A stretch of DNA of 64,000 nucleotides from Macrostomum lignano (Eukaryota). The DNA lies in NCBI GenBank assembly GCA_002269645.1, contig NIVC01002811.1, positions 62,001 to 126,000 on the forward strand, written 5' to 3'. Both the position numbers and the translations under genes were made by a program. Positions 32,612-35,800 of the stretch are shown one piece after another (positions within the stretch are counted from its first letter, which is position 1; each line of letters opens with the position of its first letter). Under the pieces are notes generated by a model. The model did no database searches and was not told the origin of the DNA. It was given only the letters and a program-made list of their open reading frames with translations.

Positions 32612-32833
32612 GTCTCGAGCTTGTGAAGTTTTGAGTTCATGAAGCCTCGAGCTCGTGAAGTTTTGAGTTCATGAAGCATCGAGCTTGTGAAGTTTTGATT
32701 TCATGAAGCCTCAAGCTCGTGAAGTATTGAGTTCATGAAGCCTCGAGCTCGTGAAGTTTTGGATTCATGAAGCCTCGAGCTTGTGAAGTTTTGGATTCAT
32801 GAAGCCTCGAGCTTGTGAAGTTTCGAGCTTGTA
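32612..32833. repeat. 32-33-bp minisatellite immediately upstream of the first RECQL acceptor
   Basis: Units of CGAGCTTGTGAAGTTTTGAGTTCATGAAGCCT at 32616, 32648 and onward. Confidence 0.9.
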
Positions 32834-32866
32834 AACCGCCTCCCGGAATTCCCGCTGCTATTCCAG

Positions 32867-35800
32867 GCCCAGCAGCCGCAGCCGCATCAGGCCGTCCCGG
32901 ACGAGGCAACCGAGCTCGAGCAGCTGGACGCCGAGCTCGCCCGTCTCAGCGCCGACATTCGCCGACTGAAGGAATTGAAAGCTCGCATTAGCGACAGGCG
33001 AGCCGCTATTCTGCGACGCCGCGACAGGGCCGAAGCAGCCGCTGGCGCCAACGCGGCGCCGGCGCCTCGGCCGGACGAGTTCGACAGCGCCGACGTCTTC
33101 GCCTGGTCGGCCGAGGCCGGCCAGCTGCTGCGCGACCAGTTCGGCCTGTCCGAGTTCCGGCCACTGCAGCTGCGGGCGGTCAACGCCACCATGTCCGGCC
33201 GGGACTGCCTGCTGGTGATGCCCACGGGAGCTGGCAAGAGTCTCTGCTATCAGCTGCCGGCTCTGCTCAGCAGGGGGCTGACTCTGTGCGTGTCCCCGCT
33301 GGTGTCGCTGATGGAGGACCAGGTCATGGCGCTGGACCGGATCGGCGTGCCTGCTGTACAGCTCAGCGCTGGCTGCGCTCAGGTCAGAATGATGATCCCC
33401 TGTGATCCCAGATCCCATCTGATTATCCCCTGTTGATCCCAGATCCCATCTGATTATCCCCTGTGATCCCAGATCCAATCTGATTATCCCCTGTTGATCC
33501 CAGATCCCATCTGATTATTACCTGCGATCCCTGATCCCATCTGATGATCCCCTGTGATCCCTGATCCCATCTGATTTGTCCCCTGTGATCCCAGATCCCA
33601 TCTGATTATCCCCTGTGATCCCAGATCCCATCTGATTATCCCCTGTTGATCCCAGATCCCATCTGATTATTACCTGCGATCCCTGATCCCATCTGATGAT
33701 CCCCTGTGATCCCTGATCCCATCTGATTTGTCCCCTGTGATCCCTGATCCCACCTGATTATCCCTTGTGATTCCAGATCCCATCTGATTGTTCCCTGTTA
33801 TTCCAGATCCCAACTGATGATCCCCTGTGATCCCTGATCCCATCTGATGATCCCCTGTGATTCCAGATCCCATCTGATGATCCCCTGTGATCCCTGATCC
33901 CATCTGATGATCCCCTGTGATTCCAGATCCCATCTGATGATCCCCTGTGATCCCTGATCCCATCTGATGATCCCCTGTGATCCCTGATCCCATCTGATGA
34001 TCCCCTGTGATTCCTGATCCCATCTGATGATCCCCTGTGATTCCTGATCCCATCTGATGATCCCCTGTGATTCCTGATCCCATCTGATGATCCCCTGTGA
34101 TCCCTGATCCCATCTGATGATCCCCTGTGATTCCAGATCCCATCTGACTATATCCTGTGATCCCTGATCCCATCTGACTATATCCTGTGATCCCTGATCC
34201 CATCTGATGATCCCCTGTGATTCCTGATCCCATCTGACTATATCCTGTGATCCCTGATCCCATCTGATTATCCCCTTTGATCCCTGTTCCCATCTCCCAT
34301 CTCAGCGTACCCACCTGTTCCCCCATTCCATCTCCTTAGTCAGACACGAAGCGCGCCCTGGATGAGGCGGCTGCCGGCCGGTTGAAGCTTCTGTACGCCA
34401 CCCAGAGCGGCTGGCCAAAAGCCGCCGCCTGATGGCCGGCCTTGAGAAGCTGCACTCGCCGGCCAGCTGTCCCGAGTGGCTATGGACGAGGTGCACTGCT
34501 GCAGCCAGTGGGGTCACGACTTCCGGCCGGATTACAAATTTCTCGGCGTGCTGAGGCGCCAGTTTCCCGGCGTGCCGACCATCGGCTTGACCGCCACCGC
34601 CTCTGACAGGGTGCTGGCCGATGTCCGCGACATGCTCGGCTTGAGCAGCGACTGCCTGCTGCTCAGGGGCGGCTTCGACCGTCCCAACCTGCTCTACAGA
34701 GTGCTGCCCAAGCCTGCTGACTCTATGCAGGTGGGTATTTGCCTTTTATCCCAGTGGCTAATGCGGGCACCCCAGTAGCTAATCCGGTCATCTCAGTAGC
34801 TAATCCGGTCATCTCAGTAGCTAATCCGGTCATCTCAGTAGCTAATCCGGTCATCTCAGTAGCTAATCTGGCCGTCTCAGTAGCTAATCCGGTCATCTCA
34901 GTAGCTAATCTGGCCGTCTCAGTAGCTAATCCGGTCATCTCAGTAGCTAATCCGGCCATCGCAGTAGCTAATCCGGCCATCTCAGTAGCTAATCCGGCCG
35001 TCTCAGTAGCTAATCCGGTCATCTAAATAGCTGATCCGGCCATCTCAGTAGCTAATCCGGCCATCTCAGTAGCTAATCCGGTCATCTAAATAGCTAACCA
35101 GCCATCTCAGTAGCTAATCCGGCCATCTCAGTAGCTAATCCGGCCGTCTCAGTAGCTAATCCGGTCATCTAAATAGCTAACCAGCCATCTCAGTAGCTAA
35201 TCCGCCCGTCTCAGTAGCTAATCCGGCCGTCTCAGTAGCTAATCCGGTCATCTAAATAGCTAACCAGCCATCTCAGTAGCTAATCCGGCCGTCTCAGTAG
35301 CTAATCCGGTCATCTAAATAGCTAATCCGGCCGTCTTAGTAGCTAATCCGGCCATCTCAGTAGCTAATCCGGTCATCTAAATAGCTAATCCGGCCGTCTC
35401 AGTAGCTAATCCGGTCATCTAAATAGCTAACCAGCCATCTCAGTAGCTAATCCGTCCGTCTCAGTAGCTAATCTGGCCATCTAAATAGCTAATCCGGCCG
35501 TCTTAGTAGCTAATCCGGTCATCTAAATAGCTAACCAGCCATCTCAGTAGCTAATCCGGCCGTCTCAGTAGCTAATCCGGTCATCTAAATAGCTAATCCG
35601 GCCGTCTTAGTAGCTAATCCGGCCATCTCAGTAGCTAATCCGGTCATCTAAATAGCTAATCCGGCCGTCTCAGTAGCTAATCCGGTCATCTAAATAGCTA
35701 ATCCGGCCGTCTTAGTAGCTAATCCGGTCATCTAAATAGCTAATCCGGCCGTCTCACTAGCTAATCTGGTCATCTAAATAGCTAATCCGTCCGTCTCAGT

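What the first reader, a model, noticed from the sequence alone, without database searches (positions are those of the whole stretch)
32820..33200. RECQL has no genomic start codon and looks built to take its AUG from a trans-spliced leader
Seen in sequence: the helicase frame opens at an acceptor (GCTGCTATTCCAG|GCC CAG CAG, exon start 32867) in phase 0. The 96 codons before FRPLQ encode a complete RECQL1-type coiled-coil N-terminus (human RECQL has a similar length there). The first in-frame ATG (~33191) lies inside the helicase core. Upstream, the frame hits a TGA after 16 codons, and I found no convincing ATG-plus-donor mini-exon. Established knowledge: flatworm spliced leaders end in AUG, and this AUG can act as the initiator Met. 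Inference: trans-splicing at 32867 would give AUG-GCC-CAG..., an exactly in-frame full-length protein, so translation of this gene would depend on the SL.
Basis: partly seen in the sequence, partly recalled or inferred. Interest (0 to 1): 0.75.

Follow-up and report, generated by a model that had tools for sequence, protein, structure and literature searches.

The report
Flatworm RECQL1 start codon from spliced leader
The window is from the flatworm Macrostomum lignano, and its RECQL1 helicase gene has no start codon of its own: it most likely gets its AUG from the spliced leader RNA joined at 32867, a mechanism known in flatworms since 2006, so this is a sound but ordinary example.

Summary
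The helicase frame opens at a TTCCAG|GCC acceptor (exon start 32867). There are 96 codons before FRPLQ, the first in-frame ATG is at 33191, and an in-frame TGA lies 16 codons upstream.

The host is Macrostomum lignano (98-100% identity to its RECQL1 proteins). Its single 35-nt spliced leader (SL) ends in ATG, and its trans-splice acceptor motif [T/C]TNCAG fits this site.

Two published gene models of this gene start without Met, at AQQPQ and QQPQ. Both therefore place the transcript 5' end within 3 nt of the acceptor. The polished Mlig_3_7 assembly is 100% identical to the window over 32331-33813, so the missing ATG is not an assembly error. No plausible ATG-plus-donor mini-exon exists in the 2.3 kb upstream.

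Trans-splicing would give ...UUGCAUG|GCC CAG..., which reads M-A-Q-Q-P in frame. That AUG would be the only one in the first 359 nt of the mRNA. I saw no SL-containing reads, so trans-splicing at this site is inferred.

The mechanism is known (Cheng et al. 2006 for Schistosoma; Macrostomum annotators already note it). This is a new member of a known kind, of low interest.

Separately, the window's RECQL1 coding sequence carries four one-base deletions that are assembly errors, not pseudogene lesions.

The parts
32608..32827 (+). 32-bp tandem repeat (6.9 copies) in the presumed outron, ending 40 nt before the acceptor. Each unit contains an ATG, but each of those ORFs stops after 11 codons.
   Evidence: identical in Mlig_3_7.
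32816..32818 (+). In-frame TGA, 16 codons upstream of the exon start.
32840..32866 (+). Pyrimidine-rich tract plus acceptor TTCCAG (32861-32866). It matches the M. lignano trans-splice acceptor motif [T/C]TNCAG.
   Evidence: motif from PMC8629364.
32867..33382 (+). RECQL1 exon 1, phase 0: AQQPQPHQ...GCAQ. It has no ATG before 33191. Donor is CAG|GTCAGA.
   Evidence: Published models start at AQQ and QQ.
33155..33169 (+). FRPLQ, the RecQ motif 0, which lies upstream of the first genomic in-frame ATG.
33191..33193 (+). First in-frame genomic ATG (codon 109). A start here would lose the coiled coil and motif 0.
34340..34730 (+). RECQL1 exon 2 (DEVH box). The window has two one-base deletions here (34400 C, 34457 G) relative to Mlig_3_7, which cause apparent frameshifts.
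35876..36112 (+). RECQL1 exon 3.
36736..37168 (+). RECQL1 exon 4 (motif VI and the zinc-binding cysteines). The window has two one-base deletions here (36857 G, 37060 C) relative to Mlig_3_7.
37649..38035 (+). RECQL1 exon 5 (winged-helix region and acidic tail). Stop TAG at 38033-38035; this codon is TAT in the Mlig_3_7 copy.
27056..30555 (+). Upstream same-strand gene CCDC22. An acceptor-like TTACAG| site ends at 27055, its own ATG is at 27075, and its stop is at 30553-30555. It could be an operon partner or simply a neighbour.

Best explanation
This is the Macrostomum lignano ortholog of RECQL1: an allele, paralog or other-assembly copy of Mlig020302.g1. Its pre-mRNA is processed by spliced-leader (SL) trans-splicing at the acceptor 32866|32867. 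The 35-nt SL ends in AUG, and the exon begins in phase 0. The mature mRNA therefore reads 5'-(cap)CGGUCUCUUACUGCGAAGACUCAAUUUAUUGC-AUG|GCC-CAG-CAG-CCG... The SL's AUG is 32 nt from the cap and is the only AUG in the first 359 nt. It serves as the initiator for a full-length protein starting M-A-Q-Q-P-Q-P-H-Q. An RNA that is not trans-spliced has no way to start the complete protein. What is shown: the ATG-less exon, the upstream stop, the acceptor, the host identity, the SL sequence, and Met-less published models that start at the acceptor. What is inferred: that SL reads actually join here, and that ribosomes initiate at the SL AUG.
For: Host identity: P0121 (A0A1I8H5J3) is 98% identical, and PAA81491.1 is a member of the same 90%-identity cluster. 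The locus matches Mlig_3_7 scaffold NIVC01000527.1 with the same gene order, CCDC22, RECQL1, PDZ.

SL sequence and acceptor motif: the SL ends in ATG, and the trans-acceptor motif is [T/C]TNCAG (PMC8629364). The window reads TTCCAG|GCC.

Gene models: they start at AQQPQ and QQPQ without Met, and the GenBank entry is named 'partial'. In Mlig_3_7, gene 5' boundaries were cut at SL-read peaks where such reads exist (PMC5730564). The neighbouring CCDC22 coding range likewise begins 1 nt after a TTACAG| site.

Not an assembly error: window 32331-33813 is 100% identical in the independent polished assembly.

No rival start: there is no ATG ORF reaching the exon and no convincing ATG-plus-donor mini-exon. 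The best of 16 candidates matches only 3 of 7 positions of MAG|GTRAGT.

Complete N-terminus: it aligns fully with the orthologs. The first genomic ATG lies after motif 0.

SL AUG position: it is the only AUG in the first 359 nt of the predicted mRNA, and G+C steps up at the acceptor.

Precedent: in S. mansoni the SL AUG is in frame in 28% of trans-spliced mRNAs, and more than 40 cDNAs need it (Cheng et al. 2006, as cited in PMC9851317). Macrostomum annotators call the terminal ATG a translation start codon (PMC10468722).
Against: I inspected no SL-containing read, cDNA or peptide. The TRANSSPLICED flag for this particular gene could not be retrieved. The GenBank model starts at the second codon (CAG) rather than at GCC, so its transcript start is 1-3 nt off the AG| boundary; this is probably a trimming or coordinate offset. 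The initiation context has U at -3, which is weak, although +4 is G. The window copy itself carries four frameshifts (see the pseudogene rival).
Confidence: 0.85

Rival explanations
1. A conventional cis-spliced 5' exon, missed by the annotations, carries the ATG and is joined to the same acceptor. The SL would then be irrelevant to initiation.
For: The acceptor is an ordinary CAG acceptor. Flatworm acceptors are reported to be shared between cis- and trans-splicing (PMC12582326). I saw no direct RNA data.
Against: Scanning 30556-32866 gave 16 ATG-plus-phase-0-GT candidates, none better than 3 of 7 matches to MAG|GTRAGT, and most lie inside minisatellites. Two separately published gene models both stop at the acceptor and are Met-less. 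The N-terminus is already as long as in the orthologs.
Confidence: 0.05
2. The SL AUG is not used. Translation would start at the internal AUG 33191 by leaky scanning, or at a near-cognate codon, giving a protein that lacks the coiled coil and motif 0 or has a different N-terminus.
For: The -3 position before the SL AUG is U (SL sequence). No other AUG in any frame lies between the SL AUG and 33191, so ribosomes that skip the SL AUG would land in frame at Met109.
Against: A start at Met109 removes FRPLQ (motif 0) and the conserved FPW/coiled-coil region, which are present and aligned with all the orthologs. That sequence is kept as an open, high-GC3 reading frame with no stop. SL-AUG initiation has been shown experimentally for schistosome mRNAs; from memory, their SL ends in the same UUGCAUG (Cheng et al. 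2006, as cited).
Confidence: 0.05
3. The window copy is a decaying pseudogene, so its missing ATG has no functional meaning.
For: There are four frameshifts in the coding exons, at 34400, 34457, 36857 and 37060. M. lignano is a hidden polyploid with many duplicated genes (PMC10468722).
Against: All 9 single-base indels in 5.9 kb are deletions in the window relative to Mlig_3_7, in exons and introns alike. They are about as numerous as the substitutions. There are no premature stops once the missing bases are restored. That is a long-read consensus error signature, not a mutational spectrum. The Mlig_3_7 copy is intact and has the identical ATG-less 5' end.
Confidence: 0.05

Closest known systems
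SL-AUG-dependent mRNAs of Schistosoma mansoni (Cheng, Cohen, Ndegwa and Davis 2006, J Biol Chem 281:733; cited in PMC9851317 and PMC12582326)
   Same: The flatworm SL ends in AUG. The acceptor is in frame with the main ORF. There is no genomic initiator upstream of a conserved N-terminus, so the SL supplies the Met.
   Different: This is a different species (a free-living macrostomorph) and a different gene. Here the case rests on sequence and on published gene models, not on cDNA or translation assays.
slORFs: reading frames created by SL addition (slORFfinder, PMC9851317)
   Same: The start codon is donated by the leader, and the ORF is invisible to genome-only gene finders.
   Different: The slORFs in that study, in nematodes, Oikopleura and trypanosomes, mostly rely on near-cognate NUG codons and often make new or alternative ORFs. 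Here a canonical AUG completes the one conserved ORF.
Human RECQL1 (PDB 2V1X, 4U7D and others)
   Same: Best solved-structure match, E about 1e-144 over residues 59-588. DEAD, Helicase_C and RecQ_Zn_bind domains are present. The N-terminal coiled-coil-like region and the FPW and FRPLQ motifs are conserved.
   Different: Human RECQL1 encodes its own ATG. The flatworm protein has GAGKS instead of GGGKS in Walker A, F instead of Y at the position aligned with the first Y of human FTAYATISY, and an acidic C-terminal tail.

Membership tests
RECQL1 (RecQ helicase Q1 subfamily) | Helicase core with DEAD/DEAH and Helicase_C domains plus the RecQ zinc-binding domain | tested here: met
   Pfam: DEAD 2.5e-26, Helicase_C 2e-20, RecQ_Zn_bind 1e-07, all above the curated cut-offs.
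RECQL1 (RecQ helicase Q1 subfamily) | Closer to RECQ1 than to BLM, WRN, RECQ4 or RECQ5 | tested here: met
   PDB search: RECQ1 chains at 1e-143 to 1e-146, BLM at 1e-98, RECQ5 at 1e-75, WRN at 1e-73. The named top database hits are all 'helicase Q1'.
RECQL1 (RecQ helicase Q1 subfamily) | N-terminal coiled-coil region, then the FPW motif and motif 0 (FRPLQ) | tested here: met
   Alignment with 10 orthologs; a/d heptad spacing read from the sequence. No structure was predicted.
SL trans-spliced gene of M. lignano | [quoted passage not shown] | tested here: met
   TTCCAG|GCC at 32861-32866; motif from PMC8629364.
SL trans-spliced gene of M. lignano | Mature transcript begins at the acceptor | tested here: met
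   Indirect evidence. Both published protein models begin within one codon of the acceptor and lack Met. A colinear transcript would have given a 5'-open ORF running back to the TGA at 32816.
SL trans-spliced gene of M. lignano | RNA-seq reads carrying the SL joined at the site | not testable with these tools
   No read data are available. The supplementary tables I could reach did not contain this gene.
SL-AUG-dependent ORF (class of Cheng et al. 2006) | The host SL ends in AUG | tested here: met
   SL ...TTGCATG in PMC8629364 and PMC5173321; host identity.
SL-AUG-dependent ORF (class of Cheng et al. 2006) | Acceptor in phase 0 with the conserved ORF, and no genomic in-frame AUG before the conserved N-terminus | tested here: met
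   the sequence is identical in a second assembly.
SL-AUG-dependent ORF (class of Cheng et al. 2006) | Initiation at the SL AUG demonstrated | not testable with these tools
   This needs N-terminal proteomics, ribosome profiling or a reporter assay.

The most novel reading that the evidence does not exclude
RECQL1 translation may be strictly gated by trans-splicing. RNA that is not trans-spliced cannot make the full-length helicase, so SL availability or usage would act as an on/off switch for a genome-maintenance helicase. SL usage is reported to be strongly associated with neoblast genes (85% of neoblast-specific genes are trans-spliced; PMC8629364). On this reading the ATG-less, phase-0 arrangement is kept by selection across Macrostomum species rather than being a neutral accident.
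Probability: 0.15. Interest if true: 0.4.

Novelty: new member of a known kind. Interest (0 to 1): 0.2.

Why it matters
The main value is practical, for annotation. Genome-only gene finders will truncate this helicase at Met109 or call it partial, as GenBank does. Recognising the SL AUG restores a complete RECQL1. It is also a clean worked example for Macrostomum, a transgenic model organism, of a gene whose reporter or rescue constructs must either keep the trans-splice acceptor in phase or add an artificial ATG. It does not change what is known about SL trans-splicing.

Tried and rejected
- Rfam scan of the whole window found nothing, so there is no SL RNA gene here.
- The SL sequence does not occur in the window, even with up to 3 mismatches.
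- Exact-product look-ups to find transcript contigs failed. The CCDC22 ORF and P0121 are not on record.
- No Macrostomum RNA-derived fragments of this gene turned up in either protein search.
- Searching the paper library for Mlig020302 gave 0 papers. PMC8629364 has no held supplements. The Grudniewska 2018 supplement has a TRANSSPLICED column, but only RECQL5 is in the stored part. The eLife 2016 supplements do not mention RECQL.
- Pseudogene reading: rejected because of the all-deletion error signature and the intact Mlig_3_7 copy.
- An ATG hidden by an assembly indel: rejected because the 5' region is identical in Mlig_3_7, and all three frames upstream of the acceptor lack a usable ATG.
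- Depletion of out-of-frame AUGs in exon 1: not significant.

Full report
**Observation.**
- The helicase frame reads ...TGA(32816-18) [16 protein letters not shown] | [13 protein letters not shown]...
- The TGA lies 16 codons before 32867.
- 96 codons precede FRPLQ (33155-33169).
- The first in-frame ATG is at 33191.
- The junction is CCCGGAATTCCCGCTGCTATTCCAG|GCCCAG.
- G+C rises from 0.50 to 0.73 exactly at 32867, and exon 1 has GC3 of 0.83.
- Between the stop of the upstream gene (30555) and 32866, no ATG in any frame opens an ORF that reaches the exon.

**What the gene is.** I assembled five exons: 32867-33382, 34340-34730, 35876-36112, 36736-37168 and 37649-38035.
- The product has DEAD, Helicase_C and RecQ_Zn_bind domains.
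- Its best solved-structure relatives are RECQ1 chains, at 1e-143 to 1e-146. BLM follows at 1e-98.
- An N-terminal alignment with ten full-length RECQL1 orthologs shows that their Met lies 4-18 residues before the conserved ELxxxxxEL motif. This protein has 18 residues there, so no conserved N-terminal sequence is missing.
- The 3-4 spacing of L17, L20, L24, L27, I31, L34, I41 and I48 fits a coiled coil. This is read directly from the sequence.

**Host.** The corrected protein is 98% identical to UniProt A0A1I8H5J3 of Macrostomum lignano. GenBank PAA81491.1, 'BOX15_Mlig020302g1, partial', belongs to the same 90%-identity cluster. That GenBank gene lies on Mlig_3_7 scaffold NIVC01000527.1 and has the same neighbours as the window: CCDC22 upstream and a PDZ gene downstream on the other strand. 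The scaffold aligns to window 28658-38445 at 98.7% identity.

**Spliced leader (SL).** M. lignano has one 35-nt SL, CGGTCTCTTACTGCGAAGACTCAATTTATTGCATG. Its trans-splice acceptors are enriched for [T/C]TNCAG (PMC8629364; the SL is also given in PMC5173321). The window's TTCCAG| fits this motif. Joining the SL to 32867 gives ...UUGCAUG|GCC CAG CAG..., which reads MAQQPQPHQ. This AUG is the only AUG in the first 359 nt of the predicted mRNA.

**Transcript evidence, indirect.**
- A0A1I8H5J3 begins AQQPQPHQ and PAA81491.1 begins QQPQPHQ. Neither has a Met, and the GenBank entry is named partial.
- A 5'-open ORF on a transcript that continued upstream colinearly would have run back to the TGA at 32816. 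Both transcript models must therefore begin within 3 nt of the acceptor.
- In the Mlig_3_7 annotation, gene 5' boundaries were cut at peaks of SL-trimmed reads where such reads exist (PMC5730564).
- The neighbour serves as an internal control. The CCDC22 coding range starts at L001 4471, which is 1 nt after a TTACAG| site and 18 nt, in frame, ahead of its own ATG. So coding ranges in this annotation run to the transcript's 5' end, and that end also sits at an acceptor.
- I could not see SL reads themselves, and I could not retrieve the trans-spliced flag for this gene.

**Is the missing ATG an artefact?** No. A pairwise alignment with Mlig_3_7 shows window 32331-33813 to be 100% identical. That stretch covers the upstream repeat, the acceptor and all of exon 1.

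The window does have four frameshifts inside the RECQL1 coding sequence, at 34400, 34457, 36857 and 37060. They are not pseudogene lesions, for these reasons:
- All nine single-base indels in 5.9 kb are deletions in the window, several of them in short runs of one base.
- They occur in introns and exons alike.
- They are about as frequent as substitutions.
- No premature stop remains once the missing bases are restored.

This is a long-read consensus error pattern, and the Mlig_3_7 copy is intact.

**Rival: a cis-spliced ATG exon.** I scanned 30556-32866 for ATG-initiated ORFs ending in phase 0 at a GT. There were 16 candidates. The best matched only 3 of 7 positions of MAG|GTRAGT, and most lie inside minisatellites. 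The ATGs of the 32-bp repeat just upstream (32608-32827) each stop after 11 codons.

**Rival: an internal start.** A start at 33191 would delete motif 0 and the conserved N-terminal region, which is nonetheless kept as an open, high-GC3 frame.

**Where the pre-mRNA starts is open.** The distance from the CCDC22 stop to the RECQL1 acceptor is 2311 nt. Of this, 1275 nt are tandem repeats. The repeat-adjusted distance of about 1036 nt, less the CCDC22 3' UTR, sits at the 1-kb threshold that Ustyantsev and Berezikov used to call operons. RECQL1 may have its own promoter in the AT-rich unique stretch 32275-32607, or it may be the downstream gene of a CCDC22-RECQL1 operon. Either way the SL supplies the AUG.

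**Comparison with what is known.** All reported flatworm SLs end in AUG, which can serve as an initiator (PMC12582326). In S. mansoni the SL AUG is in frame in 28% of trans-spliced mRNAs, and more than 40 cDNAs need it (Cheng et al. 2006, as summarised in PMC9851317). For Macrostomum, the authors of the M. cliftonense and M. hystrix genomes note that the SL's final ATG is a translation start codon, and they left it on the reads when trimming the SL (PMC10468722). The mechanism is therefore established. RECQL1 of M. lignano is a further, well-defined instance that does not seem to have been singled out before.

**Verdict.** It is a new member of a known kind, and interest is low (0.2).

Noticed in passing
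window 34400, 34457, 35858, 36484, 36620, 36722, 36857, 37060 (also 32299): Relative to Mlig_3_7, every single-base indel is a deletion in the window. Four of them break the RECQL1 reading frame. This is a systematic long-read consensus error, so any gene in this window may show false frameshifts.
   Followed up: yes
window 38033-38035 (also 37893 and 37952): The RECQL1 stop codon TAG in the window is TAT in the Mlig_3_7 copy, which extends that protein by 14 residues (…DDDDFVYSSSPDRGKPFYRK). Two further amino-acid differences are Y/S and V/I. This is an allelic or paralogous difference in the C-terminus.
   Followed up: partly
window 27050-27077: CCDC22 has a TTACAG| acceptor-like site 19 nt before its own ATG (27075), and the GenBank coding range starts 1 nt after it. 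If the gene is trans-spliced there, the SL AUG is out of frame and would open a 63-codon ORF overlapping the true start.
   Followed up: partly
window 28387-28782, 29698-30229, 30688-31180, 31713-32274, 33390-34295, 34748-35856, 36119-36602, 38082-38449, 42857-45183: Nearly every intron and intergenic spacer is filled with a different 20-55 bp minisatellite or with (CTGT)n. These arrays account for most of the differences between the window and Mlig_3_7.
   Followed up: no
window 10475-11434 (-): A 319-aa ORF with a Mos1-type HTH_48 domain and a partial Transposase_1 domain: a mariner-like transposase remnant.
   Followed up: partly
window 32568-32577: A palindromic E-box, TCACGTGA, lies in the AT-rich unique stretch about 290 nt upstream of the RECQL1 acceptor. 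It could be a promoter element if the gene has its own promoter.
   Followed up: no
window 15525-15863 (-) and 39907-40386 (-): SH3-domain and PDZ-domain exons of neighbouring genes on the minus strand. The PDZ gene's ATG sits 17 nt after a TATACAG| site, which may be another trans-splice acceptor.
   Followed up: partly
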